Positions 328-15,532 of a DNA stretch of 64,000 nucleotides are shown here, in pieces. The first letter of the stretch is position 1. Each line of letters starts with the position of its first letter. A model generated the notes under the pieces. That model made no database searches. It saw only the letters and a list, made by a program, of their open reading frames with translations, and was not told where the DNA came from. A program made the position numbers and the translations under genes. The DNA comes from Macrostomum lignano (lineage: Eukaryota): the NCBI GenBank assembly GCA_002269645.1, contig NIVC01001060.1, positions 17,702 to 81,701 of the forward strand, written 5' to 3'.

Positions 328-1812
328 GCGGCAACAGTCTATTCTCTAGCGGAGCCGGGGTTGGCTATCACGTGATCACTCCGTTCCGATTGGCTGATAG
401 CGGCGAGCGTGTCCTGGTGAATCGCGGCTGGGTACCGGCTAAGCTGGCCGATCCAGCTACCAGGCCGCAATGGCAGCAGAGAGGCCGAGTGGAATTGATC
501 GGTTTGGTGAGGCTGACTGAACCGGCTGGATTGGTTGGAGGCTATCTTGTCGGTGAGGAGCTGCTGATGCTGCTGGTCCATGCTTGAATAAATTTAAGAT
601 ACATGTTGGGTGAAGAAGGTGAAGGGAGCATGGAGACAAGGGTCAGAGATGAAGGCAGCATGTTGGGAAGGGTCAGAGATGAAGGCAGCATGTTGGGAAG
701 GGTCAGCAATGAAGGCAGCATGTTGGTAAGGGCTAGAGATGAAGGGAGCATGTTAAGAAGGGTCAGAGATGAAGGCAGCATGTTGGGAAGGGTCAGAGAT
801 GAAGGCAGCGTGTTGGGAAGGGTCAGAGATGAAGGCAGCATGTTGGGAAGGGTCAGAGATAAAGGGAGCATGTTGGGAAGGGTCAGAGATGAAGGCAGCG
901 TGTTGGGAAGGGTCAGAGATGAAGGCAGCGTGTTGGGAAGGGTCAGAGATGAAGGCAGCATGTTGGGAAGGGTCAGAGATAAAGGGAGCATGTTGGGAAG
1001 GGTCAGAGATAAAGGGAGCATGTTGGGAAGGGTCAGAGATGAAGGCAGCGTGTTGGGAAGGGTCAGAGATGAAGGCAGCATGTTGGGAAGGGTCAGAGAT
1101 AAAGGGAGCATGTTGGGAAGGGTCAGAGATGAAGGCAGCGTGTTGGGAAGGGTCAGAGATGAAGGCAGCGTGTTGGGAAGGGTCAGAGATGAAGGCAGCG
1201 TGTTGGGAAGGGTCAGAGATGAAGGCAGCATGTTGGGAAGGGTCAGAGATAAAGGGAGCATGTTGGGAAGGGTCAGAGATGAAGGCAGCATGTTGGGAAG
1301 GGTCAGAGATAAAGGGAGCATGTTGGGAAGGGTCAGAGATAAAGGCAGCGTGTTGGGAAGGGTCAGAGATGAAGGCAGCGTGTTGGGAAGGGTCAGAGAT
1401 GAAGCCAGCATATTGGGAAGGGTCAGAGATGAAGGGAGCATATTGGGAAGGGTCAGAGATGAAGGCAGAATGTTGGGAAGGGTCAGAGATGAAGGGAGCA
1501 TGCCTTGAATCGCCCGCAGACGCCCGCAGCCCGGCCAACAGCGGCGCTGTCGGGCCTCAGTCTCGGAGCGCTCGCCGCGGCGTCACCTGCCGCATACGCC
1601 GCGATGTCGAGGCTCTGAGCGGCGAGCTCAACACCCTGCCATTCTTTGTTGACGCCTGCGCTTCTGGCGTGGATTCTAGCGAATCTGCTGGCACTTTTCC
1701 TATTGGCGGGCAGACTAGACTGAGCTTGCGTAACGAGCACCTGTCCTATATTGTTACCTGGTATTCTCTGGGCGCGCTGCTGCTGGTGTTCTGGGCTATG
1801 CGAATTCGATGA
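328..1812 (+). CDS. SURF1: SURF1 cytochrome c oxidase assembly factor, 3' part; exons 328-552 and 1520-1812 (5' exons lie outside the window)
   Basis: GYHVITPF...VLVNRGWVP...VELIGLVRLTE and RDVEAL...PFFVDA...PIGGQTRLSLRNEHLSYIVTWY match SURF1 motifs; donor GTGAG at 553 and acceptor CGCAG at 1519 are both phase 1 (exact intron ends inferred). Confidence 0.93.
603..1500. repeat. 30-bp minisatellite (TGTTGGGAAGGGTCAGAGATGAAGGCAGCA), about 30 copies, filling the SURF1 intron
   Basis: Units align in register every 30 nt; variants GAAGGCAGCA/GAAGGCAGCG/AAAGGGAGCA. Confidence 0.97.
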
Positions 1813-1880
1813 TGGAAGATACATCATAATCTGTGTACTATACATATGCTCTCAGAATTATTTTAGTACTTTATTGACCT

Positions 1881-1970
1881 ATTAAATATTTCATGAAAAT
1901 TATTGTGCTTTTTTAAATAGGCTTCTTACATGGTTTTTCGTTCTTGACTATTTATTTTTCTTTGTTTTAG
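1881..1970 (+). promoter_or_regulatory. Candidate SURF1 poly(A) signal (ATTAAA 1881-1886) followed by a strong polypyrimidine 3' splice acceptor (TTTATTTTTCTTTGTTTTAG ending 1970)
   Basis: Both motifs read directly; no coding donor obviously pairs with this acceptor. Confidence 0.45.
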
Positions 1971-1974
1971 ACAT

Positions 1975-2697
1975 GCTGGGCCCATGCTAGAGTTGCTGGG
2001 CCCGCCTCCCAGATCCCCAGTTGCTGAGCCAGCCTCCTAGATCCTCCGTTGCCGGGCCAGCAGCTCCCCAGAGTGTCAGTTGCTGGGCCAGCCTCCCAGA
2101 TCCTCAGTTGCTGGGCCAGCCTCCCAGATTGTCAGTTGCTAGGCCAGCCTCCTAGATTGTCAGTTGCTAGGCCAGCCTCCCAGATCCTCAGTTGCTGGGC
2201 CAGCCTCCCAGATTGTCAGTTACTGGGCCAGCCTCCTAGATTGTCAGTTGCTAGGCCAGCCTCCCAGATCCTCAGTTGCTGGGCCAGCCTCCCAGATAGT
2301 CAGTTACTGGGCCAGCCTCCTAGATCCTCAGTTGCTGGGCCAGCCTCTCAGATCCTCAGTTGCTGGGCCCGCCTCCCAGATCCCCAGTTGCTGAGCCAGC
2401 AGCTTCCCAGAGTGTCAGTTGCTGGGCCAGCCTCCCAGATTGTCAGTTGCTGGGCCAGCCTCCTAGATTGTCAGTTGCTAGGCCAGCCTCCCAGATCCTC
2501 AGTTGCTGGGCCAGCCTCCCAGATTGTCAGTTACTGGGCCAGCCTCCTAAAGTGTCAGTTGCTGGGCCAGCCTCCCAGATCCTCAGTTGCTCGGCCAGCC
2601 TCCCAGATTGTCAGTTGCTGGGCCAGCCTCCTAGATTGTCAGTTGCTAGGCCAGCCTCCCAGATCCTCAGTTGCTGGGCCAGCCTCCCAGATCCCCA
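1975..2697. repeat. 28-bp minisatellite (CAGTTGCTGGGCCAGCCTCCCAGATTGT and variants) between SURF1 and the GTF2H2 ATG
   Basis: Tandem units with an internal CTGGG/CCCAG inverted repeat. Confidence 0.92.
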
Positions 2698-2773
2698 GTG
2701 AATCATATTGCCAGTCAGTCAAGCAGGCACAGCCCCATGCTTATGCATGCCAAGAGTTTGAACAGCAAACAGC

Positions 2774-5010
2774 ATGGCAAACTACGGATTCGCAAAGCCG
2801 TCTGCGCGACCCACAGCGGGCACCAGCGGCTACCGGCTTCAGGACGAGGATGCGGCCGCGCTCTCTGGCGGCGGCTTTCGCTGGGAGTCGCAGTTCGAGC
2901 GCTCCTGGGAGGCCCTGGCTGAGGATGAGGAGGGTCGCCTGGCTGGGGCTGTTGGGCGTCTGGAGCAGGTGGGTGAATTGTTATTGGGCTCATTGGACTT
3001 ATTTAGTTAGCTAGTCAGTCAGTCAGTCAGTCAGACAGTCAGTCAGTCAGTCAGTCAGTCAGTCAGTCAGACAGTCAGTCAGTCAGACAGTCAGTCAGTC
3101 AGTCAGTCAGTCAGTCAGTCAATCAGTCAGTCAATCAGTCAGTCAGTCAGTCAGTCAGTCAGTCAGTCAGTCAGTATCGAACCCCAAACCCCGCAGGCCC
3201 GCAAGCGCCGGCACCGTCTCGCAGCGGCAGCCCTGCTACCCGGCGGCGGTGGCCGGGCCAGCAAGCTGGGCATGATGCGGCACCTGCTGCTGTGCCTGGA
3301 CTGCTCAGAGACCATGGGCTTGGCCGATCTCAAACCCTGCCGTTTAGCCGCCTGCCTATCCGCAATGCGCAACTTCGTGTCCGGATTCTTCGATCAGAAT
3401 CCCATCGGACAGCTGGGCGTACTGCTGACCAGACGGAAGCTGGCCGAGAGAGTGACCGAGCTCACTGGCAATCCCAGGCGACATTTGGACGCGCTAAAAG
3501 ATTTGGCTCAGGCCGGCTCGGGCAAAACCGCCCGTCCCGAAGGGGAGGCGTCATTTCAGAACCTGCTGGAGATGGCCTACGACACGCTGGGCCCCCTGCC
3601 AGGCCACGCCTGCAAAGAGGTTCTCGTGCTGGTGTCAGCCTTGAGCACCTGCGATCCGGGAGATATCGGTGCGACCATTAGCAAACTGGCCAAGGCTAGG
3701 ATCAGGTGTTCGGTGAGTGAATCATTTCTGTCTGCCTTTTTTTCTTTTATTGTTACTGTTTTTCAAGTCCTAGATCTGTACCCTTCCTACCCTCCTTTCC
3801 CTCTACCCGCTTTCCTCTAATTACCCTCCTTCCCCTCTACCCGCTTTCCCCTCTCTACCCGCCTTGCCCTCTCTACCTGCTTTCCCCTCTACCCGCTTTC
3901 CCCTCTACCCGCTTTCCCCTCTACCCGCTTTCCTCTCTCTACCCGCCTTCCCCTGTCTACCCACCTTCCCCTCTCCACCCGCTTTCCGCTCTACCTGATT
4001 TCCGCTCTCTCTCGCGTCTCCGCTTCCCTTTCTCTCATTTTACCCTCCCCCCCTTAGATCTCTCCCCTCTATCCTCACTCTCGTCTATCCTTTCTCTACC
4101 CTCTTTACCCTCTTTCTAATTACTTTCTACCTGATTTCCTCTCTCTCTCTCTCGCGTCCCCGCTTCCCTTTCTCTCATTTTACCCTCCCCCCCCTTAGAT
4201 CTCTCCCCTCTATCCTCACTCTCGTCTATCCTTTGTCTACCCTCTTTACCCTCTTTCTACTTTCTCCCAACGCTTTCCTTCCTAGCCTCTCTCCATCTCT
4301 CTGTCTCTGTTCCGCCATGATGCGTCAAGGGCAAAGTGCAAGCTCTAGGGAACATTGTTTTACCTTCTAAACCTTGCCAATTGGCGTCCCTTTCCCATAA
4401 ATTGCCCAATTTACAGGTAATATCTCTGTCAGCGGATATTCGCGTATTGCGCAAACTCGCCCAGGCCACTGGTGGCACCTACTCTGTGCCGCTAGACGCT
4501 GTCCATCTGTCCGACATCATGTCCAGCTTCCTGCCGCCGCCGGCCAGCGCTCCCGATCCCGCTCTGATCAAAATGGGCTTCCCCTACTCGGCTGGGCAGG
4601 ATGGCCAGGAGCAGCCGAGATCCAAGCAGGATGTCATCCGCATTTGCGCCTGTCACGGCACCGTACTATCAGCCGGGGCCACCGCTCACGCCTGCCCCCA
4701 GTGCGCCTGTCTTTACTGCGAGCTGCCGGTTGATTGTCGGATTTGCGGATTAAGTTTGGCCAGCGCCGCTCACCTGGCCAGATCCTATCAGCACCTGTTC
4801 CCGTTGAAGGCATTCGCCGAGGTCACCTTGGCGGCCAGTACGGGCTGTTGCGGATGTGGCGATAGACTAGGCGCTAACACGGAAGCCTACCAGTGCAGCG
4901 ACTGTCGGTCTCATTATTGTATCGATTGCGATCGGCTGTTGCACGACTCTTTGCACTCTTGCCCAGTTTGTTTGCAGACTTTATCGGTTAAAACTACTAT
5001 CGCTACTTAG
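2774..5010 (+). CDS. GTF2H2: TFIIH subunit p44 (Ssl1 family; VWA domain plus C-terminal zinc fingers); exons 2774-2968, 3197-3712, 4417-5010
   Basis: RWESQFERSWEALAEDEEG, LGMMRHL...DLKPCRL...FFDQNPIGQLG, CDPGDI, CPQC...CELPVDCRICG, HLARSYQHLFPL and the C-terminal Cys/His cluster; both introns phase 0 with GT-AG ends. Confidence 0.96.
3013..3175. repeat. (TCAG)n microsatellite filling GTF2H2 intron 1
   Basis: Direct inspection. Confidence 0.97.
3780..4300. repeat. Pyrimidine-rich low-complexity repeat in GTF2H2 intron 2, including a direct duplication of ~120 bp (about 4005-4130 and 4141-4258)
   Basis: CTCTACCCGCTTTCCC-type units; the block CTCTCGCGTC...TTAGATCTCTCCCC...TTTACCCTCTTTCTA occurs twice. 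Confidence 0.85.
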
Positions 5011-5535
5011 TAGTATAAAAGAATAATATTTGTGCGCTAACAAAACTTTTGTACCTGAGCCAGTAAGTAACTTGCTTGATAAAGATTGAGAACACCGGGA
5101 GTAAAGTAGATAAGTAGTCTTTATCTTTATTCAACACATTGGTTCACAGTGAGAGGTCCAGTGGTACATGCATTAGTCACACGTCAAGCATTTAAAACTT
5201 TGTTTGCTCTAATAATACACAATACAATAACTGCCTAATCGATGCAAAAGTATTTCGTACGTTGTGACAGGTGTTTTTTTACTTTATTAACTCTCTTCTG
5301 TGCCTTATATTTGTTTATTTTCATAAGTAGCATTCAAAGGAATACTTTCGGCTTTTTATATTGTCTAATACAATTAGGTCTACCGCTGTAGTCTCAGTTA
5401 TTCTGTTAAAACGCTTAATATTTAGTATATAGGACTATCAGCTTTGCCCCCCTCGGGGGTAACTTACGCTGACAACATTAGAACTGAAATTTGTCATTTT
5501 TGTCATCTAAAATCATTAAGATCAACCGCTACTAC

Positions 5536-5749
5536 GGCGGTTGTAGCCTAGTGGTTATTAAAGCGTCGGATTCATGACTAGGTCCCGGGGGTTCGATTCT
5601 CGACCCACTCACAACAATTTGTGTCCTTGAGCAAGACACATTGACTCTGCATTGCTTCAGTTGCTTCAATTGCTTCAGCTTTAAAATGGGTGCCCCCCAG
5701 TCCTTGGAGTGGAGCAATAACTACGGCTGAGCTGTCGGTTGTACATCTG
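5536..5749 (+). mobile_element. tRNA-derived SINE with a CORE-like central domain
   Basis: Pol III A box (TAGCCTAGTGG) and B box (GGTTCGATTC), followed by TGTGTCCTTGAGCAAGACAC...TAAAATGGG resembling the CORE domain; homologous copies at 16875-17140 and 17473-17590. Confidence 0.8.
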
Positions 5750-5835
5750 GCTATTAGGTCAGGTGTAATTAATTACCATGTGTTTCTAATATATTTCAAC
5801 TCCATCTATTTTTCAGTGTCAACTCTACAACCGCA

Positions 5836-6735
5836 ATGGCAGCCACTTTAGACATTCGTTTGAAGCGTATTAACAAAACCTACACCGATGGCGACACAAT
5901 CTCCGGCTATGCCGTGATTCGTTGCAAACAAGACTGCGGTCACAATGGTCTCACATTGAATCTGACTGGCACAGTGAGCATGCAGCTTAGCTCAAAAAAT
6001 GTCGGAGTATTCGAAGCATTCTATAACAGTATCAAGCCGATTCAACTGACCGGAGCCACACTAGAACTAGCTAAGCCTGGCAAATTCACCACCGGATTAA
6101 CAGAAATCCCATTTGAAATACCGTTCAAATCCAAGGGTAACAAAACACTGTATGAGACATACCACGGAGTGTTCATTAACATTCAGTACGTGCTTCAGTT
6201 GGACTTGAAACGCTCTCTATTGAACAAAGATCTCAGCAAAACTTGCGAATTCTTAGTCGAATACAATCCAAAGAATTCTGGCCAACCGAGCTCGCAGACG
6301 CCAGTAACTTTCGCCATCAGCCCGGACAGTGTAGTCAATGTTCAGAACAAGGCCAGTCTACCGAAATTTCGCGTCACCGGCCAACTCACATCGAGTCACA
6401 TTAGTATTTCTGAGCCACTGAGTGGCGAGCTAGTCATTGAGCAGTGCGCTACTCGGATTAAAAGTGTAGAACTGCAGCTGGTACGCGTAGAGACCTGCGG
6501 CTGTCTGGAAGGCTACGCTAAAGAGACTACTGAGATACAGAATATCCAAGTGGCTGATGGAGACGCTCCCAGAGGGATTAAAATCCCTCTGCACATGGTG
6601 CTGCCGCGTCTGTTCACCTGTCCGAGCGTTTCGGCTACCAATTTCCGAATCGAATTCGAAGTCAACATTGTTGTCGTGTTTCAAGACGACTATTTGGTGT
6701 CTGAAAATATTCATATTCGTGTTAGTAGATTCTGA
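5836..6735 (+). CDS. VPS26C: VPS26C / DSCR3, arrestin-fold subunit of the Retriever complex; single coding exon, 299 aa
   Basis: LDIRLKR..., GTVSMQLSSKNVGVFEAFYNSIKPIQL, LYETYHGVFINIQY, ELQLVRVETCGC.EGYAKE.TEIQNIQ.ADGD, PRLFTCP are DSCR3 hallmarks. Confidence 0.97.
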   Translation: MAATLDIRLKRINKTYTDGDTISGYAVIRCKQDCGHNGLTLNLTGTVSMQLSSKNVGVFEAFYNSIKPIQLTGATLELAKPGKFTTGLTEIPFEIPFKSKGNKTLYETYHGVFINIQYVLQLDLKRSLLNKDLSKTCEFLVEYNPKNSGQPSSQTPVTFAISPDSVVNVQNKASLPKFRVTGQLTSSHISISEPLSGELVIEQCATRIKSVELQLVRVETCGCLEGYAKETTEIQNIQVADGDAPRGIKIPLHMVLPRLFTCPSVSATNFRIEFEVNIVVVFQDDYLVSENIHIRVSRF

Positions 6736-6869
6736 TCTGTTGAAGTTGATGATTTAAAACAATTCCTAATTTAAAAGCGATGGTTCTGTAAACGTCTATG
6801 TAAAAAGGCTGGCTATTGAATTAGATAACGAAGTAGACGGTGTCCGTTGAATGCCATTTTTGTCTAATT

Positions 6870-6998
6870 AACAGACACTTAGACAGGCAGACAGAAAGGC
6901 GGGCAGACAGACTGTCAGACTGACAAACATACTGACAGACAGACACGCAGACAGACAGGCAGGCAGGCAGACAGACAGGCAGACAGGCAGACAAAGGC

Positions 6999-7035
<37 letters not shown>

Positions 7036-7148
7036 GGCAGACAAAGGCAGGCAGACAGACAGACAGACAGACAGACAGACAGGCAGACAAAGGCAGGCAG
7101 ATAGGCAGGCAGACAGACAGGCAGACAGAAAGGCAGACAAAGGCAGGC

Positions 7149-7185
<37 letters not shown>

Positions 7186-7202
7186 GGCAGACAAAGGCAG
7201 GC

Positions 7203-7235
<33 letters not shown>

Positions 7236-7402
7236 GGCAGACAAAGGCAGGCAGATAGGCAGGCAGACAGACAGGCAGACAGAAAGGCAGACAAAGGCAG
7301 GCAGACAGATAGGCAGACAGACAGACAGGCAGACAGACAGGCTGACAGAAAGGCAGGCAGATAGATAGGCAGGCAGACAGACAGGCAGACAGAAAGGCAG
7401 GC

Positions 7403-7435
<33 letters not shown>

Positions 7436-7563
7436 CTAAGACAGACTGTCAGACTGACAAACATACTGACAGACAGGCAGACAGACAGACAGGCTGACAG
7501 AAAGGCAGGCAGATAGATAGGCAGGCAGACAGACAGGCAGACAGAAAGGCAGGCAGACAGACC

Positions 7564-7599
<36 letters not shown>

Positions 7600-7790
7600 C
7601 TAAGACAGACTGTCAGACTGACAAACATACTGACAGACAGACAGGCAGAAAGGCAGGCAGACAGACAGATAGACAGGCAGGCAGGCAGACAGAAATGCAG
7701 GCAGACAGAAAGGCAGCCAGACAGACCGACAGATAGATGGACTGACTGACTGACTGACACTCAGATAGACGGATACACAGACAGACAGAC
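6870..7790. repeat. Compound (CAGA/CAGG)n microsatellite with a recurring interrupting block GACAGACTGTCAGACTGACAAACATACT
   Basis: Interrupting block seen near 6908, 7442 and 7608. Confidence 0.95.
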
Positions 7791-8504
7791 AGCCTCTAAC
7801 ATTCAGCATTCACAGGACAATTTCATTCGTGTTAACTACAATCAACGCACCTTCCTAAAATGCTTCCTAATTTTCATAGAACTTGGAAACATAAAAACAC
7901 GCAGAAAACGTTATATTGCCATTCGCAGTTATTTTGCGACAACACGTTAAGATTTGTTGGTTTCTGCCATAGACAGTAGCGCTCAACAAAACAAATGTGA
8001 TTAAAGTATATGTGCTAATTTATAGGAAAGCTCGTTAAGTCCTATCTTAAGCAAATTTAATCCTGATTAATTCAATCCTAGTACTGTGAGAAAAAACTAT
8101 CAAATTTTGTTGTTTAATAGCACCAGAGTATTAAAAATTGCTTAGCTTTTATCACATATATCTACAGATTGATGGACACTAAAAAATTGCTAATCATCCT
8201 GTATACTTACAGTAGTCAGTCGCTAATTTGCATAATTTTACAGTAGGACTGTGCTAAAAATATTTTACTAAAGTACTCGTAATCCCGAGTCCTAATTCAA
8301 TAAATCATTATGTAATAGTGTTCATCATCTATAGCAGTACATGTATCTTTGATTATTGATTTTTTTACATTTATACGCTCGTAAAAGTTGGATTTTCTAT
8401 TTTTACATTTACCTTTGTGCTAGGATTTAGATTGATTGTCATCAACTGATATCATATATTAGAGATGTTGTTAAGTTCATGTATTTGCAACTGTTTTATG
8501 GAAG

Positions 8505-8778
8505 ACAGACAGGCTGACAGACAGACAGAAAGACAGGCTGACAGACAGACAGGCTGACAGACAGACAGGCGGAAAGACGACACTAAGACAGGCAGACAGA
8601 CAGACACTAAGACAGACAGACAGACAGACACACTAAGACACTAAGACAGACAGACAGACAGACACACTAAGACACTAAGACAGACACACTAAGGCACTAA
8701 GACAGACAGACAGACATACTAAGACACTAAGACAGACAGACAGACAGACACTAAGACAGACAGACAAACAGACAGAAA
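8505..8778. repeat. (CAGA)n microsatellite with many CACTAAGA interruptions
   Basis: Direct inspection. Confidence 0.92.
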
Positions 8779-8855
8779 GCGTGATACTAATACTGATATT
8801 TTCAATCACATACTACTAATATACATCCATAATTCCGCCGCTGCCGTCAGCAGAG

Positions 8856-8870
8856 ATGAATCGCCAGTAG
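8856..8870 (+). promoter_or_regulatory. uORF1 (ATG AAT CGC CAG TAG; MNRQ*) in the leader of the bZIP gene
   Basis: Read directly; 75 nt upstream of uORF2. Confidence 0.7.
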
Positions 8871-8945
8871 CCCCAGCTACACCGCTGCGCCCCGAAAGGC
8901 CAGACAGTCAAAGAAACGCAACGAAAACCCAACACAGACGCCAAC

Positions 8946-9122
8946 ATGGCCACCTTTACCTGCCAGTCAACTCAGTGCTCAAAGTACAACAAGACTACTG
9001 CTACTAATACTACTACTACTACCAAGCATAATCACTTCTGCAAGCATGACTGCCAACATGGCTTCAATGGTGACTCCGCCAATGACGGATGCCAGTGGTG
9101 GAGATTTCTCTTCATATCTTAA
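8946..9122 (+). promoter_or_regulatory. uORF2, 58 aa, out of frame with and overlapping the bZIP CDS by 77 nt
   Basis: CCAACATGG strong Kozak context at 8946; 100 nt upstream of ATG 9046 (shifted frame); TAA at 9120-9122. Confidence 0.75.
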
Positions 9123-10246
9123 TCTCTGTCAGGATGCTCGTCACGCTGAGCAAGGCGTTGAGCTGCTCCTGTCATCCGCATCAGTTTGGCTAACTGATTC
9201 GCTGTTGCCAAAGTCCGGCCCAGCCTCCCATCGTACGGACGATGATGATGAAGTGTCATCGGTGCTTGACGGCTTCCCTAGCAACAGTGCCGTTGCTGAT
9301 GACGCCGAGATGGATAGTATTTTCCCATTTCTAACGCCAGAATCGGCAGATACTGCTGGTGCTTCGGCTGTTCGCGACTGTCTTCTCGACTTGGACGGTG
9401 TCGACTTTGATGTCGATGAGTTGATGCCGCCGGATCGACCGGTTTTCGACGATGGTGATGATGACGACGCAGATGAAGATTTGGTGATGTCATCGTCATT
9501 GACGTCGTCTGTCGATCAGACGCCACCGCCGCAGGTGCTGCCTCGCAGAGGCAGAGGCAAAGGCGGCGGTTTCGGCAGGAAGTCGAAATCTTCTAATATG
9601 AGGACTAAAGGCGAGGCTAATCGAGAGGCTGCCTATCGGTTAGTTGCTAACTGATGCCCACTCTGTGTATTGCTGACTCCCCCTCTCGGACCCCCTCTGA
9701 CCTCTCGGGCCTCCCCCTCCCTGATCGCTCCCTCCCGGACCTCCCCCTCTCTGACATCCCCCTCGCCGACCTCTCCCTCTCGGACCTCCCCCTCTCTGAC
9801 CTACCCCTCTCTGATTACCCCTTCTCCGACCTCCCCCTCACTGACGTTCCCCTCTCTGACTCCCCCTCTTTAGCCTCCCCCTGATCTCTTCCTCTGTGAA
9901 CTCCCCTCTCTGATATTTCCTTTATCAAGTCTACACGCCCCAACAGTCGCACACACAACGCCAAGCCCTGCCCCCCGCCCTCAGATACAGAGCAAAGCAA
10001 CGCCAATCCAACTCGCTGGCCAAGTCCCGACACTCGCAACTGGTTGCCGACAATCAACGTCTGGAAGCTGAAGTGGCATCGGCCGAGAGCCAACTGCAGT
10101 TCCTGCTGCACCTGTGCCGCAGGAGGCCAACGCCAGCTAAGAAGCGACTGCAGCTAAGAATTTTAGAGGCCGATGAAGATTGCGATCCACCGCAGCTGGG
10201 TTCGAAACCCAAACTTATCACCATGGTTTTTAAACACCGGGTTTGA
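9046..10246 (+). CDS. ATF4/ATF5-like bZIP transcription factor, 284 aa; exons 9046-9638 and 9985-10246
   Basis: Splicing GTTAGT (9639) to CTCAG (9984), phase 2, restores the basic region EANREAAYR|YRAKQRQ followed by the zipper LVADNQRLEAEVASAESQLQFLLHL, alignable with ATF4 KMEQNKTAATRYRQKKR...LAKEIQYLKDL; acidic N-terminus. Confidence 0.85.
9675..9910. repeat. C-rich ~15-bp degenerate repeat (CCCCTCTCTGACCT-like) in the bZIP intron
   Basis: Direct inspection. Confidence 0.8.
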
Positions 10247-10554
10247 ACTGGTGCGAAATCGGTGGTCTAGTTTTTGTGCTTCTGTTCGTCCTTTAATGTT
10301 CCCTCGCCGACAGACATTGATCAAGGGATTCTGTTTCTTTTTTTAAATGATAAACTAACCTATCATTATAGTTTTATTAGTTTCCTGTTTGATAACTTTT
10401 GTCGATCTTTTCGTATATATGCTTCTAAATCTTTGTTGTGTGAGCTATTGATAAAAAAGTGTACTTTCCTTTCTATCCACTTTATTAAATCGTTTTTTTA
10501 ATAGTTCTTAGAATCGCCCCTAAATCAATCCTGAGAAAGCAATTAAATCGTTAT

Positions 10555-11690
10555 GAGAATCGCACCAATCTACCCGGAGAATCACGCCAATCTACCCCGA
10601 GAATCACCCCAATCTACCCTGAGAATCACCCCAATCTACCCTGAGAATCACCCCAATCTACTCTGAGAATCACCTCAATTTACCCTGAGAATCAACCCCA
10701 ATCTACCCTGAGAATCACCCCCAATCTACCCTGAGAATCGCCCCAATCTACCCTGAGAATCACCCCAATCTACTCTGAGAATCGCCTCAATTTACCCTGA
10801 GAATCAACCCCAATCTACCCTGAGAATCAACCCCAATCTACCCTGAGAATCACCCCAATCTACTCTGAGAATCACCCCAATCTACCCTGAGAATCACCCC
10901 AATCTACCCTGAGAATCACTCCAATCTACCCTGAGAATCACCCCCAATCTACCCTGAGAATCGCCCCAATCTACCCTGAGAATCAACCCCAATCTACCCT
11001 GAGAATCGCCTCAATCTACCCTGAGAATCAACCCAAATCTACCCTGAGAATCACCCCAATCTACCCTGAGAATCACCCCCAATCTACCCTGAGAATCACC
11101 CCAATCTACTCTGAGAATCACCCCAATCTACCCTGAGAATCGCCCCAATCTACCATGAGAATCGCTCATTTGTCTACCTGAGAATCACCTGAATCTACCG
11201 GGAGAATCGCCCTAATCGACCCGGAGAATCGCTCATTTGTCTACCTGAGAATCGCTCATTTGTCTACCTGAGAATCGCTCATTTGTCTACCCTGAGAATC
11301 GCCCCAATCTACCCTGAGAATCGCCCCAATCTACCCTGAGAATCGCTCATTTGTCTACCTGAGAATCGCCCCAATCTACCCTGAGAATCGCTAATTTGTC
11401 TACCTGAGAATCGCCCCAATCTACCCTGAGAATCGCTCATTTGTCTACCTGAGAATCGCTCCAATCTACCCTGAGAATCGCCCCAATCTACCCGGAGAAT
11501 CGCTCATTTGTCTACCTGAGAATCACCTGAATCTACCGGGAGAATCGCCCTAATCGACCCGGAGAATCGCCCCAATCTACCCTGAGAATCGCTTATTTGT
11601 CTACCTGAGAATCGCCCCAATCTACCCGGAGAATCGCTCATTTGTCAACCTGAGAATCACCCCAATCTACTCTGAGAATCGCCCCAATCT
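10555..11690. repeat. ~20-23 bp minisatellite (CTACCCTGAGAATCACCCCAAT; second variant CTACCTGAGAATCGCTCATTTGT)
   Basis: Tandem units; the second variant appears only after ~11160. Confidence 0.95.
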
Positions 11691-12124: not shown

Positions 12125-14220
12125 GTGTCAGTCGGGGTGCCAAATGGAGTGTCATATGGAGTGTCAAACGGGGTGCCAAATGGAGTGCCAAATGAAGTGC
12201 CAAATGGAATGTCAAACGGGGTATCAAATGGAGTGTCAAATGGAATGTCAAACGGGGTGTCAAATGGAGTGCCAAATAGAGTGCCAAATTGGGTGTCAAA
12301 TGGAGTGCCAAATAGAATTTCAAACGGGGTGTCAAATGGAGTGCCAAATGGAATGTCAAACTGGGTGTCAAATGGAGTGCCAAATGCGGTGTCAAATGGA
12401 GTGTCAAATGGAGTGCCAAATGGAATGTCAAACTGTGTGTCAAATGGAGTGCCAAATGAAGTGCCAAATAGAGTGCCAAATGGAATGTCAAACTGTGTGT
12501 CAAATGGAGTGCCAAATGGGGTGTCAAATGGAGTGTCAAATGGAGTGCCAAATGGAGTGCCAAATAGAGTGCCAAATAGAGTGCTAAATGGAATGTCAAA
12601 CTGGGTGTCAAATGGAGTGCCAAATGGGGTGTCAAATGGAGTGCCAAATGGAGTGCCAAACGGGGTGCCAAATAGAGTGCCAAATGGAATGTCAAATGGA
12701 GTGCCAAACGGAGTGCCAAATGGAGTGCCAAATGAAGTGCCAAATAGAGTGCCAAATGGAATGTCAAACTGGGTGTCAAATGGAGTGCCAAATGGAATGT
12801 CAAACTGGGTGTCAAATGGCGTGCCAAATGGAATGTCAAATGGAGTGCCAAATAGAATGTCAAACGGGGTGCCAAATGGAGTGCCAAATGGATTGCCAAA
12901 TGGGGTGTCAAATGGAATGTCAAATGGAGTGCCAAATGGAGTGCCAAATGGGGTGTCAAATGGAATGTCAAATGGAGTGCCAAATGGAATGTCAAACGGG
13001 GTGCCAAATGCAGTGCCAAATGGATTGCCAAATGGGGTGTCAAATGGAATGTCAAATGGGGTGTCAAATGGAGTGTCAAATGGATTGCCAAATGGAGTGC
13101 CAAATGGGGTGTCAAATGGAATGTCAAATGGAGTGCCAAATGGAATGCCAAACGGGGTGCCAAATGGAGTGCCAAATGGATTGCCAAATGGGGTGTCAAA
13201 TGGAATGTCAAATGGGGTGTCAAATGGAGTGTCAAATGGAGTGCCAAATGGAGTGCCAAATAGAGTGCCAAATGGAATGTCAAACTGGGTGTCAAATGGA
13301 GTGCCAAATGGGGTGTCAAATGGAGTGCCAAATGGAGTGCCAAACGGGGTGCCAAATAGATTGCCAAATGTAATGTCAAACTGGGTGTCAAATGGAGTGC
13401 CAAATGGGGTGTCAAATGGAGTGCCAAATGGAGTGCCAAACGGAGTGCCAAATGGAGTGCCAAATGAAGTGCCAAATAGAGTGCCAAATGGAATGTCAAA
13501 CTGGGTGTCAAATGGAGTGCCAAATGGAATGTCAAACTGGGTGTCAAATGGCGTGCCAAATGGAATGTCAAATGGAGTGCCAAATGGAATGTCAAATGGA
13601 GTGCCAAACGGAGTGCCAAATGGAGTGCCAAATGAAGTGCCAAATAGAGTGCCAAATGGAATGTCAAACTGGGTGTCAAATGGAGTGCCAAATGGAATGT
13701 CAAACTGGGTGTCAAATGGCGTGCCAAATGGAATGTCAAATGGAGTGCCAAATGGAATGTCAAATGGAGTGCCAAACGGAGTGCCAAATGGAGTGCCAAA
13801 TGAAGTGCCAAATAGAGTGCCAAATGGAATGTCAAACTGGGTGTCAAATGGAGTGCCAAATGGAATGTCAAACTGGGTGTCAAATGGCGTGCCAAATGGA
13901 GTGCCAAATGGAGTGCCAAATGGGGTGTCAAATGGAGTGCCAAATGGATTGCCAAATGGGGTGTCAAATGGAATGTCAAACGGGGTGTCAAATGGAGTGC
14001 CAAATGGAGTGCCAAATGGGGTGTCAAATGGAGTGCCAAATAGATTGCCAAATGGGGTGTCAAATGGAATGTCAAATGGGGTGTCAAATGGAGTGTCAAA
14101 CGGAGTGTTAAATGAAGTGCCAAATGGAGTGCCAAATGGGGTGTCAAATGGAGTGTCAAACGGAGTGTCAAATGAAGTGCCAAATGGAGTGCCAAATTGG
14201 GTGTCAAATGGAGTGTCAAA
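12125..14220. repeat. 12-bp minisatellite (GTGCCAAATGGA), about 175 copies, with no frameshifting indel
   Basis: Direct inspection; gives (V-P/S-N-G)n on + and (PFGT)n/(HLAL)n on -. Confidence 0.95.
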
Positions 14221-14782
14221 CAGTATGCGCGCTGCTGTCATTTGATGCCAATTGACACCATGCATATCAGGCGGGCATGTAGGTTGCAGCTGAGAAGCTA
14301 AAAGCATACTTCTGCCAACTCTATCAATTCCCACCTATGCTTCTAGGCACATTCTCAAGACAAAAATTGTCAGTCAGCAGCCTCAGAAAATGAATCGCTT
14401 CTAAAGCGAAATAAGCAATATTTATGATCTGAGCTGCTTTAGAAATGCTTGAGCCAGTCTGTCAAAGCCACCTGCAAGTTTTCCTAGCAGAGTTCAAGGC
14501 GCTGTCAACTTCATCATGGATGTTCCCAGCATCCTTGGAACAGGGAATTTAAGCATAGAGCCATGCCAGTCAAACATTCTGAAAACCTTTTTTTGCAGAC
14601 GGGGTAAGGCCTGAAGCGTAAAGCCTCTCAGTCCTTCTTGCTGTATTTTAACCAATCGGAGGTAAGACGCAACTGTAAACCTTTATAATGTATAAAATGG
14701 ATTGCTGTGGTCTCAAACTTGTTAACTTCAATCCTTGACCTGCAACGCCTATAGAAAGCTGAAGAAAGTTTGTCAATATATC

Positions 14783-15532
14783 ATGTCGACATTTAAACTA
14801 ATGTTGTTGCTTCTTCAAAGCGTTCTTAACAGCCTGTCGCTGCCAGCCCTGGCCCAGCTGTGCCCCTCGCCGTTCAGCCTTGAGGCCGGGAAGTGCATTT
14901 TCGTGAACAAGGTGAGAAGCTTCAGCTGGTGCGAGGCCAACCGGCAGTGCGCCATGATCGGAGGCGAGCTGCTCAACTCGTACAGCTCTCTGCAGCTGCT
15001 CAGCAGCATGCCGAGTTTCGCCTGCAGCTGCTACATTTGGTTTGGAGTGACCGACTTGGCTGATGAGAGATTCTCCAGCAGATCGGGCTGGCAATTGGTC
15101 AAGGGTAACGGCATCATGCCGCTGAATGACTCGCTATGGGCCACTTTATCCGAGCCAAACGAGAACACCTTTGAGAACTGCATCTTCCATGCATCCCATG
15201 GCAAAATCCACAACAATCCATGCGCAGCTGAGCGCGGGTTCGCTTGCGAGTGGACTCCGAGTGCCGCTCAGCCGCTGCCAACTGCTGCCTCGTGGAAGCT
15301 GGCTCCGTTCAAGCGGACCAGCTACCACGCCAGCACTGAGTACTGCTACTCTGACCTGACCAATGTTCACTCCGAGCTGGCTTGTGTCATGTCAGCTTTC
15401 AATTCTGGCAACTGCAGACACGTGCTGTACAACAGCAAGCTGAGAGCCTGCCGCCTGCTGCTGTTCACCGACGCTCAGGTGGAGGCGGAGATCGAGACGA
15501 GCGCCGACTGGGTCAAGTTCAGCGTGTATTGA
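14783..15532 (+). CDS. Secreted C-type lectin domain protein with a C-terminal degenerate PAN/apple-like domain (paralog A), intronless, 249 aa
   Basis: Hydrophobic leader from ATG 14783; C-P...GKC...SWCEANRQC..IGGEL, WFGVTD, EPN, NNPC...GFACE; then YC...SELAC...CRHVLYNSKLRACRL. Confidence 0.85.
   Translation: MSTFKLMLLLLQSVLNSLSLPALAQLCPSPFSLEAGKCIFVNKVRSFSWCEANRQCAMIGGELLNSYSSLQLLSSMPSFACSCYIWFGVTDLADERFSSRSGWQLVKGNGIMPLNDSLWATLSEPNENTFENCIFHASHGKIHNNPCAAERGFACEWTPSAAQPLPTAASWKLAPFKRTSYHASTEYCYSDLTNVHSELACVMSAFNSGNCRHVLYNSKLRACRLLLFTDAQVEAEIETSADWVKFSVY

What the first reader, a model, noticed from the sequence alone, without database searches (positions are those of the whole stretch)
8840..10246. 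ATF4-like bZIP with the two-uORF 'delayed reinitiation' leader, missed by the ORF track
Seen: exactly two ATGs lie between the 8850 acceptor-like AG and the CDS. uORF1 (8856-8870, MNRQ*) is followed 75 nt later by uORF2 (8946-9122, 58 aa, strong Kozak). uORF2 is out of frame and overlaps the first 77 nt of the CDS, covering its in-frame ATGs at 9046, 9058, 9067 and 9082. The bZIP domain appears only after removing an intron inside the basic region. Established: mammalian ATF4 has a very short reinitiation-permissive uORF1 and an inhibitory overlapping uORF2 of similar length, giving translational induction when eIF2-alpha is phosphorylated. Inference: this invertebrate gene is the integrated-stress-response effector, with that logic conserved. 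No DSGxxS beta-TrCP degron was seen.
Basis: partly seen in the sequence, partly recalled or inferred. Interest (0 to 1): 0.75.

Follow-up and report, generated by a model that had tools for sequence, protein, structure and literature searches.

The report
Flatworm ATF4-like gene with paired uORFs
A Macrostomum lignano (flatworm) bZIP gene of the ATF4 type carries the short-uORF plus overlapping-uORF leader that controls ATF4 translation in other animals, which extends a known stress-response design to flatworms without revealing a new one.

Summary
uORF1 (8856-8870, MNRQ*), a 75-nt spacer, and uORF2 (8946-9122, 58 codons) are all present. uORF2 is out of frame and overlaps the first 77 nt of the CDS. 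The CDS needs removal of a 346-nt intron inside the basic region. The window is Macrostomum lignano, and the spliced 284-aa protein is already in NCBI (PAA72802.1, 'hypothetical protein'), so the gene model was not missed. From this sequence alone the uORF layout is not significant (12% of shuffles). Conservation is the real evidence. A second M. lignano paralog (Mlig020208) has the same layout. So do mRNAs of that paralog's orthologs from two other, unidentified species whose mRNAs carry the M. lignano spliced leader. The shared layout is a tiny uORF1, an invariant GCCAA[C/G]ATGG uORF2 start, the same relative frame, and a 77- or 86-nt overlap. Those mRNAs begin with the spliced leader, which ends in ATG, so the mature leader probably has a third upstream AUG. 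The family's bZIP profile is closest to ATF4/ATF5 (PDB top hit, 10-bit margin; 77% bootstrap). The window protein alone is ambiguous between ATF4 and C/EBP. It is the divergent paralog. Stress-regulated translation is inferred, not shown. This is a new member of a known kind.

The parts
8814..8820 (+). Branch-point-like TACTAAT, about 30 nt upstream of the acceptor AG
   Evidence: Read directly from the sequence. This stretch is identical in the homeolog L002. A function in splicing is inferred.
8834..8853 (+). Pyrimidine-rich tract followed by a tandem CAG|CAG, the candidate 3' splice (probably SL trans-splice) acceptor at 8850 or 8853
   Evidence: Read from the sequence. The published trans-acceptor motif is YTNCAG (PMC8629364); here the site reads CGTCAG, a partial match. 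mRNAs of the paralog's orthologs join the SL 2 nt before the uORF1 ATG, and an acceptor at 8853 would give the same 2-nt spacing. Not verified for this gene.
8856..8870 (+). uORF1, ATG AAT CGC CAG TAG (MNRQ*), with a purine at -3
   Evidence: The paralog and its orthologs have a 2-codon uORF1 (M[E/D]*) in GCCATGG context at the equivalent place.
8871..8945 (+). 75-nt ATG-free spacer between uORF1 and uORF2
   Evidence: The spacer is 111-119 nt in the B-type leaders.
8946..9122 (+). uORF2, 58 codons, context GCCAACATGG, out of frame with the CDS, overlapping its first 77 nt
   Evidence: The start context GCCAA[C/G]ATGG is invariant in all leaders. The relative frame is the same in all, and the overlap is 77 or 86 nt.
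9046..9638 (+). Coding exon 1 (aa 1-197 plus 2 nt). It has four in-frame ATGs (9046, 9058, 9067, 9082), an acidic N-terminal region and the first half of the basic region
   Evidence: identical to PAA72802.1.
9639..9984 (+). 346-nt phase-2 intron inside the basic region (GTTAGT...CCCTCAG), largely a 15-nt tandem repeat
   Evidence: repeat at 9711-9882. Present in the homeolog as 416 nt with donor GTTGGT. Absent from paralog B, whose CDS is uninterrupted. If retained, the ORF stops at 9654.
9985..10246 (+). Coding exon 2: the rest of the basic region, the leucine zipper, the C-terminal tail and the stop
   Evidence: Pfam bZIP_2 covers aa 190-232.

Best explanation
The locus is Mlig009232g2 of Macrostomum lignano. 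It is a two-exon gene for a 284-aa bZIP protein. The protein belongs to a Macrostomum-specific pair of paralog families that are the flatworm representatives of the ATF4/ATF5 group.

Its leader carries the 'paired uORF' switch known from ATF4 in other animals. The proposed mechanism is inferred from the ATF4 and GCN4 models:
1. Ribosomes translate the 4-codon uORF1 and resume scanning.
2. When eIF2 ternary complex is plentiful they reacquire it within the 75-nt spacer.
3. They then start at the strong uORF2 AUG and are carried 77 nt past the main start codons in another frame, so little bZIP protein is made.
4. When eIF2-alpha is phosphorylated, reacquisition is slower. Some ribosomes pass the uORF2 AUG and start at one of the four in-frame main AUGs.

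The mature mRNA is probably SL trans-spliced at 8850 or 8853. The leader's own terminal AUG would then open a 2-3 codon uORF0 (MQR* or MR*), closed by the TGA at 8857, that overlaps the uORF1 AUG.

The window gene is the faster-evolving paralog. The intronless Mlig020208 is the more conserved one. Both may be stress-regulated, much like vertebrate ATF4 and ATF5.
For: Shown:
- Anatomy of the locus.
- Identity to NCBI PAA72802.1, and the organism.
- Pfam bZIP_2 above its gathering score.
- The only relatives in a scan of 1.8 billion representatives are Macrostomum-type proteins sharing ANREAAYRYRxKQR.
- A profile of five family members hits ATF4 (1ci6) first among all PDB chains (E=2.3e-5, 27.8 bits; next is NFIL3 at 17.8 bits).
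- A local hmmsearch puts all ATF4/ATF5 references at 25-36 bits and the next family at 17.9.
- In a neighbour-joining tree the Macrostomum proteins are monophyletic (99.7%) and sister to ATF4/5 (77% bootstrap).
- Tyr at the position where other bZIPs have Cys or Ser (N-x2-AA-x-R-Y-R) is shared only with ATF4/5 in that alignment.
- Leader conservation. Paralog B (L007/L008) and four mRNA contigs from two other species (L003-L006) have a 2-codon uORF1 in GCCATGG context, then a uORF2 of 60-69 codons. The uORF2 start context is GCCAAGATGG, the relative frame is the same, and the overlap is 77 or 86 nt. Any extra uATG downstream of uORF1 is in the uORF2 frame.
- Those mRNA contigs start with 16-24 nt identical to the 3' end of the M. 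lignano SL.
- The three substitutions inside uORF2 between the two A homeologs are all silent for uORF2. One is TAA to TAG, which changes N to S in the main CDS.
- Both A homeologs keep an intact ORF and GT..AG boundaries, with dN/dS 0.48.

From the literature:
- Human ATF4 has a start-stop uORF0, a 3-codon uORF1, a 60-codon uORF2 overlapping the CDS, and several in-frame AUGs at the CDS start (PMC11058473).
- Paired uORFs are reported to be conserved in metazoan ATF4 except in nematodes, including Aplysia and Hydra, often with an extra weak-context uORF upstream of uORF1 (PMC4176352).
- The Drosophila crc leader confers stress induction (PMC7495428).
Against: - No RNA evidence for this gene's own 5' end was obtainable, so the presence of both uORFs in its mRNA is unproven.
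- The mRNA evidence comes from orthologs of the paralog (B), not of the window gene. No ortholog of the A type was found outside M. lignano.
- The window protein alone is ambiguous. C/EBP-beta is the top single-sequence PDB hit (E=0.019, against 0.17 for ATF4). With an A-only profile, C/EBP-gamma (15.1 bits) interleaves with ATF4 (21.4 and 16.1 bits).
- No similarity to ATF4 outside the bZIP was detected, and no ATF4 reached E<0.001 in the representative scan.
No invertebrate ATF4 was available for the tree.
- The putative acceptor CGTCAG is only a partial match to YTNCAG.
- Both A-copy intron donors (GTTAGT, GTTGGT) depart from the GT[G/A]AG consensus.
- dN/dS of 0.48 is only moderate constraint.
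- No conserved stem-loop was found in the uORF2/CDS overlap (z from -0.04 to -1.06).
- The sequence just 3' of the uORF1 stop is GC-rich.
- No beta-TrCP degron is present.
Confidence: 0.62

Rival explanations
1. The true ATF4 ortholog and ISR effector of M. lignano is the intronless paralog Mlig020208. The window gene would then be a lineage-specific, fast-evolving duplicate that inherited the leader. It may be redundant, sub- or neo-functionalised, or decaying.
For: - Only the B type has orthologs in other species (P0004 and P0006/7 resemble P0008, not P0001).
- A and B are similar only over 71 aa of the bZIP (44%).
- The A zipper is the more divergent from ATF4.
- A carries a repeat-filled intron with non-consensus donors in the basic region.
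- dN/dS between the A homeologs is 0.48.
- The A uORF1 is not positionally identical to the B uORF1.
Against: - Both A homeologs keep the full ORF, the splice boundaries, uORF1, and uORF2 with only uORF2-silent changes.
- Gene models in this assembly are described as coming from genome-guided transcriptome assembly, which implies expression and splicing (PMC8629364).
- This rival concerns which paralog is the main effector. It does not contradict the leader mechanism.
Confidence: 0.3
2. The mature leader differs from the genomic reading. The 5' end or trans-splice site could lie downstream of uORF1, for example at the CAG ending at 8876. The SL's AUG would then be in frame with uORF2 with no intervening stop, giving one long inhibitory uORF. 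That would produce constitutive repression or leaky scanning, not delayed reinitiation.
For: - The 5' end is unverified.
- Several CAGs lie between 8850 and 8946.
- 8946-8877 = 69 nt, a multiple of 3, and reading the sequence shows no stop codon in that frame. This is my own reading and was not run through a tool.
- In L007 the genomic ATG at the SL-equivalent position (5745) is likewise in frame with uORF2 and open.
Against: - In the mRNAs of the paralog's orthologs the SL joins 2 nt upstream of uORF1, so uORF1 is retained.
- The branch-point-like TACTAAT and the pyrimidine tract sit upstream of 8850/8853, not of 8876.
- uORF1 is kept in both A homeologs.
Confidence: 0.15
3. The protein is a C/EBP-like or other bZIP_2-class factor rather than an ATF4-family member. 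Its uORFs would act as generic translational dampers, or as start-site selectors as in C/EBP-alpha and C/EBP-beta.
For: - C/EBP-beta is the top single-sequence PDB hit.
- The zipper of the window protein has as many or more identities to C/EBPs (10-12 of 37) as to ATF4 (5-9 of 37).
- There are four in-frame AUGs at the CDS start plus a downstream Met89. This recalls alternative start-site use in C/EBP mRNAs, which I cite from memory.
Against: - The basic region is ATF4-like (RYR; 10 of 21 identities to human ATF4 against 5-6 of 21 to C/EBPs).
- The family profile prefers ATF4/5 by 7-10 bits.
- Bootstrap support for the grouping with ATF4/5 is 77%.
- From memory, the C/EBP uORF ends upstream of the regulated AUG and does not overlap the main start.
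Confidence: 0.1
4. The uORF arrangement is a chance feature of a GC-rich leader and has no regulatory role.
For: 12% of dinucleotide shuffles of the window's spacer reproduce an 'only overlapping out-of-frame uATG' layout.
Against: - The same layout, frame and uORF2 start context are kept in four diverged leaders, whose coding N-termini are only 38-47% identical or unalignable.
- The product of the per-leader shuffle rates is about 7e-5. This is only a rough guide because the leaders are related by descent.
- Substitutions within uORF2 preserve it, including the stop codon.
Confidence: 0.03

Closest known systems
Mammalian ATF4 mRNA leader (start-stop uORF0, 3-codon uORF1, about 60-codon uORF2 overlapping the CDS)
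   Same: - Tiny uORF1 (4 codons here, 2 in the paralog).
- A spacer of about 75-120 nt.
- A uORF2 of 58-69 codons in strong context, overlapping the main start out of frame by 77-86 nt.
- Several in-frame AUGs at the start of the CDS.
- A probable extra minimal uORF upstream of uORF1.
(PMC11058473.)
   Different: - The extra upstream AUG would be donated by a trans-spliced leader, not encoded in cis.
- No conserved stem-loop in the overlap.
- No beta-TrCP degron.
- The protein is alignable to ATF4 only in the bZIP.
- Regulation is untested.
Invertebrate ATF4 homologs with paired uORFs (Aplysia ATF4 homolog, Hydra, insect crc/ATF4)
   Same: The same paired-uORF logic is reported as conserved across metazoa except nematodes. 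Those leaders often have an additional weak-context uORF before uORF1 and in-frame second AUGs within uORF2 (PMC4176352). Both features are seen here in the SL AUG and in L003/L006.
   Different: - Flatworms are not mentioned in the main text of that survey.
- A planarian study reported no obvious atf4/5 homolog (PMC11645412).
- The basic region here reads AAYRYRxKQR; the vertebrate ATF4/ATF5 references in the alignment read AA[T/N/L]RYRQ[K/R]K[K/R].
Vertebrate ATF5, the ATF4 paralog that also has a two-uORF leader (from memory)
   Same: Two paralogs in one genome both keep the uORF1/uORF2 design. Here these are the A family (Mlig009232/009092) and the B family (Mlig020208).
   Different: The duplication here is independent: the Macrostomum proteins form their own clade (99.7% bootstrap).
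Yeast GCN4 (four uORFs, delayed reinitiation)
   Same: Works alike in principle. A short reinitiation-permissive uORF is followed by an inhibitory uORF, and the outcome is read through ternary-complex availability.
   Different: The inhibitory GCN4 uORFs do not overlap the main ORF. GCN4 scores far lower against the family profile (15.7-16.9 bits).
C/EBP-alpha and C/EBP-beta (bZIP_2 class with a uORF-controlled choice of start site)
   Same: Same Pfam family (bZIP_2), a similar zipper, and multiple in-frame AUGs.
   Different: The basic-region signature is different (RNNIAVRKSRDK), and the uORF does not overlap the main start.

Membership tests
ATF4/ATF5 bZIP family | bZIP domain of the bZIP_2 class | tested here: met
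   PF07716 at 25.6 bits against a gathering score of 22.3, aa 190-232, and only after intron removal.
ATF4/ATF5 bZIP family | Basic-region signature N-x2-A-A-x-R-Y-R-x-K, with Tyr where other bZIPs have Cys or Ser | tested here: met
   ANREAAYRYRAKQR. In the alignment only the ATF4/ATF5 rows share RYR. That this signature is diagnostic rests on my own knowledge.
ATF4/ATF5 bZIP family | Closer to ATF4/5 than to any other bZIP family | tested here: inconclusive
   - Met for the family. Profile against PDB: ATF4 27.8 bits, next hit 17.8. ATF4/5 score 25-36 bits against 17.9 for the next family. NJ sister group at 77% bootstrap.
- Not clear for the window protein alone: C/EBP-beta is first, and C/EBP-gamma interleaves.
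ATF4/ATF5 bZIP family | Homology to ATF4 outside the bZIP domain | tested here: not met
   The full HMMER scan of 1.8 billion representatives returned no ATF4 at E<0.001. Only acidic N-terminal motifs of uncertain meaning were seen.
ATF4-type paired-uORF leader | A very short uORF1 followed by a longer uORF2 that overlaps the main start out of frame | tested here: met
   8856-8870 and 8946-9122 with a 77-nt overlap. Conserved in the homeolog, the paralog and two other species.
ATF4-type paired-uORF leader | Both uORFs present in the mature mRNA of this gene | not testable with these tools
   No M. lignano transcript contig for this gene is in the collections. It is shown only for mRNAs of the paralog's orthologs.
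ATF4-type paired-uORF leader | Translation of the main ORF rises when eIF2-alpha is phosphorylated; uORF1 acts positively and uORF2 negatively | not testable with these tools
   Needs reporters or ribosome profiling.
ATF4/ATF5 bZIP family | beta-TrCP degron DSGxxxS (a vertebrate ATF4 feature, not family-defining) | tested here: not met
   No DSG or D[ST]G..[ST] in either A homeolog.
C/EBP family | Basic region R-N-N-[IM]-A-V-[RK]-K-S-R-x-K | tested here: not met
   5-6 of 21 identities in the basic region, against 8-10 for ATF4/ATF5.
SL trans-spliced genes of M. lignano | Unpaired 3' splice acceptor (YTNCAG) close to the start of the first exon, and SL (…TTGCATG) on the mRNA | tested here: inconclusive
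   - CGTCAG|CAG| at 8845-8853, with a TACTAAT about 30 nt upstream.
- The motif match is partial.
- The SL is seen on mRNAs of the paralog's orthologs but not on this gene's mRNA.

The most novel reading that the evidence does not exclude
In macrostomid flatworms the ATF4 switch may be assembled partly by trans-splicing. The spliced leader is joined 2 nt before uORF1, and its own terminal AUG becomes a built-in uORF0 5 nt upstream of the uORF1 AUG. Delayed reinitiation would then operate on a trimethylguanosine-capped, SL-bearing mRNA as a three-uORF system. An independent duplication has also kept this leader on two diverged ATF4-like paralogs, a parallel to vertebrate ATF4 and ATF5. This would also give a sequence handle for finding the 'missing' atf4 of planarians and parasitic flatworms.
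Probability: 0.35. Interest if true: 0.5.

Novelty: new member of a known kind. Interest (0 to 1): 0.35.

Why it matters
ATF4's paired-uORF control is a textbook mechanism. It has already been reported as conserved across metazoa except nematodes, so finding it in a flatworm is expected.

Three things give the finding practical value:
1. The gene is annotated only as 'hypothetical protein' or 'bZIP domain-containing'. No paper in the searched library links Macrostomum to ATF4, and a planarian study failed to find atf4/5 homologs. The signature ANREAAYRYRxKQR plus the leader layout gives a concrete candidate for the flatworm integrated-stress-response effector.
2. M. lignano is a transgenic regeneration model, so uORF-mutant reporters are feasible.
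3. The interplay between an AUG-terminated spliced leader and a reinitiation switch is a tidy question that can be tested directly.

Tried and rejected
- Transcript evidence for the window gene. Exact look-ups of P0001, P0003 and P0002 returned only the NCBI genome contigs or nothing, so no M. lignano mRNA contig was found.
- Literature look-ups for Mlig009232/Mlig009092 and for the SRR run numbers of the ortholog contigs found nothing. The species of L003-L006 remain unidentified. I infer they are macrostomids because their 5' ends match the M. lignano SL exactly.
- Vattem & Wek 2004 (PMC509193) is not held.
- The homeolog L002 is about 98% identical in the leader, too close for a constraint test beyond three substitutions.
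- The third protein search, with the human ATF4 bZIP as query, returned only short vertebrate ATF4 fragments.
- I considered that paralog B, and possibly A, carries a genomic remnant of the SL and is therefore a retrocopy. Local alignment of the SL to the upstream regions is no better than shuffles (p=0.43-0.91). I kept this only as a passing note.
[quoted passage not shown] Folding z-scores of -0.04 to -1.06 give no support.
- Rfam at gathering thresholds over the whole window gave no match.
- The hypothesis that the SL AUG or an upstream exon extends the main ORF is rejected. The CDS frame is closed by the TGA at 8857-8859.
Full report
**Observation.**
- An ATG at 8856 opens MNRQ*, with its stop at 8868-8870.
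- After a 75-nt ATG-free spacer, an ATG at 8946 in the context GCCAACATGG opens a 58-codon ORF that ends at 9122.
- No other ATG lies between 8700 and 9046.
- The long ORF starting at 9046 is in a different frame ((9046-8946) mod 3 = 1).
- uORF2 therefore covers the first 77 nt of that ORF and its in-frame ATGs at 9046, 9058, 9067 and 9082.
- Unspliced, the ORF stops at 9654. Removing 9639-9984 (GTTAGT...CCCTCAG) joins CG|A and rebuilds the basic region ANREAAYR|YRAKQR.
- The result is a 284-aa protein that passes Pfam bZIP_2 (25.6 bits against 22.3).
- The CDS frame is closed upstream by the TGA at 8857, so there is no N-terminal extension.

**Identity of the locus.**
The spliced protein is 100% identical over its full length to NCBI PAA72802.1. 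That entry is 'hypothetical protein BOX15_Mlig009232g2' of Macrostomum lignano, on contig NIVC01001060.1 of GCA_002269645.1. UniProt calls it 'BZIP domain-containing protein'. The gene model, intron included, was therefore already annotated. What is not annotated is its family assignment and its leader.

The gene lies in a co-oriented run SURF1 - Ssl1/GTF2H2 - Vps26 - bZIP. The run is syntenic at a homeologous locus, L002 (Mlig009092g1, 286 aa).

**Is the layout more than chance?**
Not from this sequence alone. 12% of 20,000 dinucleotide shuffles of the 175 nt between the uORF1 stop and the main ATG gave the same outcome, meaning at least one uATG with all uATG ORFs overlapping the CDS out of frame.

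The homeolog's leader is about 98% identical, so it says little. Even so, the three substitutions inside uORF2 are all silent for uORF2: GCC to GCT, AAC to AAT, and the stop TAA to TAG. The last one changes Asn to Ser in the main protein.

**Relatives and their mRNAs.**
A full HMMER scan of 1.8 billion representatives found only two real distant relatives, P0004 and P0006/P0007. A profile search added P0008, which is M. lignano Mlig020208g2. All share ANREAAYRYR[L/M]KQR.

P0004 and P0006/7 resemble P0008 (47% and 38% identity overall, about 85% in the bZIP). The window protein matches P0008 only over 71 aa of the bZIP (44%). So M. lignano has two paralog families:
- A: the window gene and its homeolog, with an intron in the basic region.
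- B: Mlig020208, with an uninterrupted CDS.

Only B has orthologs in the other two species in the database.

Those orthologs sit on 1.1-kb Logan contigs from RNA runs, with uninterrupted CDS. Each contig begins with 16-24 nt identical to the 3' end of the published M. lignano spliced leader, CGGTCTCTTACTGCGAAGACTCAATTTATTGCATG (PMC8629364). They are therefore trans-spliced mRNAs. I could not identify the species.

**Leader comparison.**
- In both foreign mRNAs the SL is joined 2 nt before a 2-codon uORF1 (ATG GAT TAA or ATG GAG TAG) in a perfect GCCATGG context.
- A spacer of 111-119 nt follows.
- uORF2 then starts in the context GCCAAGATGG, runs 60-64 codons, and overlaps the main ATG by 86 or 77 nt.
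- The genomic B loci of M. lignano show the same uORF1 (ATG GAA TAG), uORF2 (69 codons) and 86-nt overlap.
- In all five leaders (main ATG minus uORF2 ATG) mod 3 = 1.
- GCCAA[C/G]ATGG is invariant.
- The only additional uATGs downstream of uORF1 are in the uORF2 frame.
- The uORF2 peptides share only MA[S/T]FT.YQS-like starts.
- Leader DNA is clearly homologous among the B genes (z = 11-17 against shuffles) and weakly between A and B (z = 3.6-6.0).
- The per-leader shuffle rates for the layout are 12%, 8%, 5% and 13%.

This retention, while the coding N-termini have diverged almost beyond alignment, is the real evidence that the layout is functional.

**Trans-splicing and a third AUG.**
The SL ends in ATG. 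In the foreign mRNAs it opens a 21- or 28-codon uORF0 in weak context (T at -3, C at +4) that overlaps uORF1.

In the window, a branch-point-like TACTAAT (8814-8820), a pyrimidine-rich tract and a tandem CAG|CAG (8848-8853) precede uORF1. The acceptor reads CGTCAG, a partial match to the published YTNCAG. If the SL is joined at 8850 or 8853, its ATG is in the CDS frame but is closed at once by TGA 8857 (MQR* or MR*), overlapping the uORF1 ATG. An acceptor at 8853 would reproduce the 2-nt SL-to-uORF1 spacing of the foreign mRNAs.

After subtracting the (AGAC)n arrays (6881-7792 and 8503-8776), the distance from the Vps26 stop (6735) to 8850 is about 930 nt. That is under the 1-kb repeat-adjusted operon threshold of PMC8629364.

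None of this is verified for the window gene, because no M. lignano transcript for it is in the collections.

**Family assignment.**
- The window protein alone is ambiguous. phmmer against PDB ranks C/EBP-beta first (E=0.019) and ATF4 at 0.17.
- A profile of five family members ranks ATF4 (1ci6) first among all PDB chains (E=2.3e-5, 27.8 bits), 10 bits ahead of NFIL3, GCN4, ATF2 and the C/EBPs.
- The family profile was also run against 25 reference bZIPs. The ATF4 rows are database sequences, and my typed human ATF4 matched P0009 at 100%. ATF4/ATF5 take the top five places (25-36 bits), and the next family scores 17.9.
- With an A-only profile ATF4 is still first, but C/EBP-gamma interleaves.
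- In an ungapped, register-anchored NJ tree the Macrostomum proteins are monophyletic (99.7%) and sister to ATF4/5 (77% of 300 bootstraps).
- The basic region has the ATF4-type Tyr (RYR) that no other reference shares.
- No homology outside the bZIP was detected, and there is no DSG degron.

I conclude that the family is ATF4-like with moderate confidence. The window gene is its divergent member.

**Mechanism (inferred).**
By analogy with mammalian ATF4 and yeast GCN4, uORF1 is translated and allows scanning to resume. With ample ternary complex, ribosomes reinitiate at uORF2 and are carried past the four main AUGs. With eIF2-alpha phosphorylated, some bypass the uORF2 AUG and start the bZIP ORF.

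The match to human ATF4 is close. Human ATF4 has a start-stop uORF0, a 3-codon uORF1, a 60-codon overlapping uORF2 and three in-frame AUGs at the CDS start (PMC11058473). Hiraishi et al. reported paired uORFs in ATF4 across metazoa except nematodes, including Aplysia and Hydra. They often found a weak-context uORF before uORF1 and a second in-frame AUG in uORF2 (PMC4176352). The Drosophila crc leader is functionally stress-responsive (PMC7495428).

I found no conserved stem-loop in the overlap.

**Is the A copy alive?**
Both homeologs keep the ORF, the GT..AG boundaries and both uORFs. dN/dS is 0.48 (12 non-synonymous and 8 synonymous changes). The donors (GTTAGT, GTTGGT) are off the GT[G/A]AG consensus. 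The intron is mostly a 15-nt tandem repeat that differs in length between homeologs (346 against 416 nt). Gene models of this assembly are described as derived from a genome-guided transcriptome, which implies that the spliced transcript was observed. I could not check that directly.

**Novelty.**
This is a new member of a known kind. No paper in the library links Macrostomum with ATF4. A planarian study reported no obvious atf4/5 homolog (PMC11645412). The identification is therefore useful, and the SL-donated AUG is a modest twist. The design itself is what the literature predicts.

**Verdict.**
Interest is 0.35.

Noticed in passing
L007 5740-5758; L008 5744-5762: In the M. lignano B paralog (Mlig020208, intronless CDS) the genome has no AG at the point where the orthologous mRNAs of two other species carry the SL junction. 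It reads ATTG-ATG|CC (L007) or ATTGC-TG|CC (L008), which looks like the last 8 nt of the SL (ATTGCATG). This hints that B could be a retrocopy of a trans-spliced mRNA. Local alignment of the whole SL against these regions is no better than shuffles (p about 0.4).
   Followed up: partly
window 9639-9984 (repeat 9701-9882): The intron that splits the basic region is largely a CTCCCCCTCTCTGA-type 15-nt tandem repeat. It is 346 nt here and 416 nt in the homeolog. Its donors are non-consensus (GTTAGT, GTTGGT). It is absent from paralog B. It may be a lineage-specific intron gain by repeat insertion.
   Followed up: partly
window 8946-9122 vs L002 9901-10077: All three substitutions inside uORF2 between the two A homeologs are silent for uORF2. 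One is its stop, TAA to TAG, which is non-synonymous (N to S) in the overlapping main CDS. The numbers are small but the pattern is suggestive of constraint on uORF2.
   Followed up: partly
window 9052-9061: The second in-frame main ATG (9058) sits in exactly the same 10-nt context as the uORF2 start (GCCAACATGG). This is a stronger context than that of the annotated first ATG at 9046 (GCAAGCATGA).
   Followed up: no
window ~769-10246 (+ strand): There is a co-oriented gene run SURF1 - Ssl1/GTF2H2 - Vps26 - bZIP, syntenic at the homeologous locus L002. A textbook 3' splice site (CTAAT...CTATTTTTCAG|) ends at 5816, 19 nt before the Vps26 ATG at 5836. The repeat-adjusted Vps26-to-bZIP distance is about 930 nt. 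Both are compatible with an SL-resolved operon. Not verified.
   Followed up: partly
window 6881-7792, 8503-8776, 10554-11690, 12137-12996: Large simple and tandem repeat arrays flank the gene. They are (AGAC)n on the 5' side, a 22-nt unit (TGAGAATCGCCCCAATCTACCC, about 51 copies) just 3' of the gene, and a 36-nt unit further on. They account for several long stop-free 'ORFs' in the six-frame list.
   Followed up: no
L003 14-79; L006 22-108: In the foreign mRNAs the SL's own ATG opens a 21- or 28-codon uORF0 (MPW...) in weak context that overlaps the 2-codon uORF1. Its length and frame are not conserved. In L007 the genomic equivalent is in frame with uORF2.
   Followed up: partly
window 14735-15532 and 61327-62106: Other coding fragments are a weak C-type lectin-like ORF (E=5.7e-4, below the gathering score) and an ORF with immunoglobulin I-set/Ig_3 domains.
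   Followed up: no
UniProt A0A1I8H250 (P0002, 173 aa): An older M. lignano annotation holds a third A-type sequence, 85-92% identical to the window protein. It starts at MDSIFPF and lacks the 'RY' of AAYRYR, which looks like a mis-spliced model at the same intron. It suggests at least three A-type copies or alleles in this hidden polyploid. Its DNA was not retrievable.
   Followed up: partly
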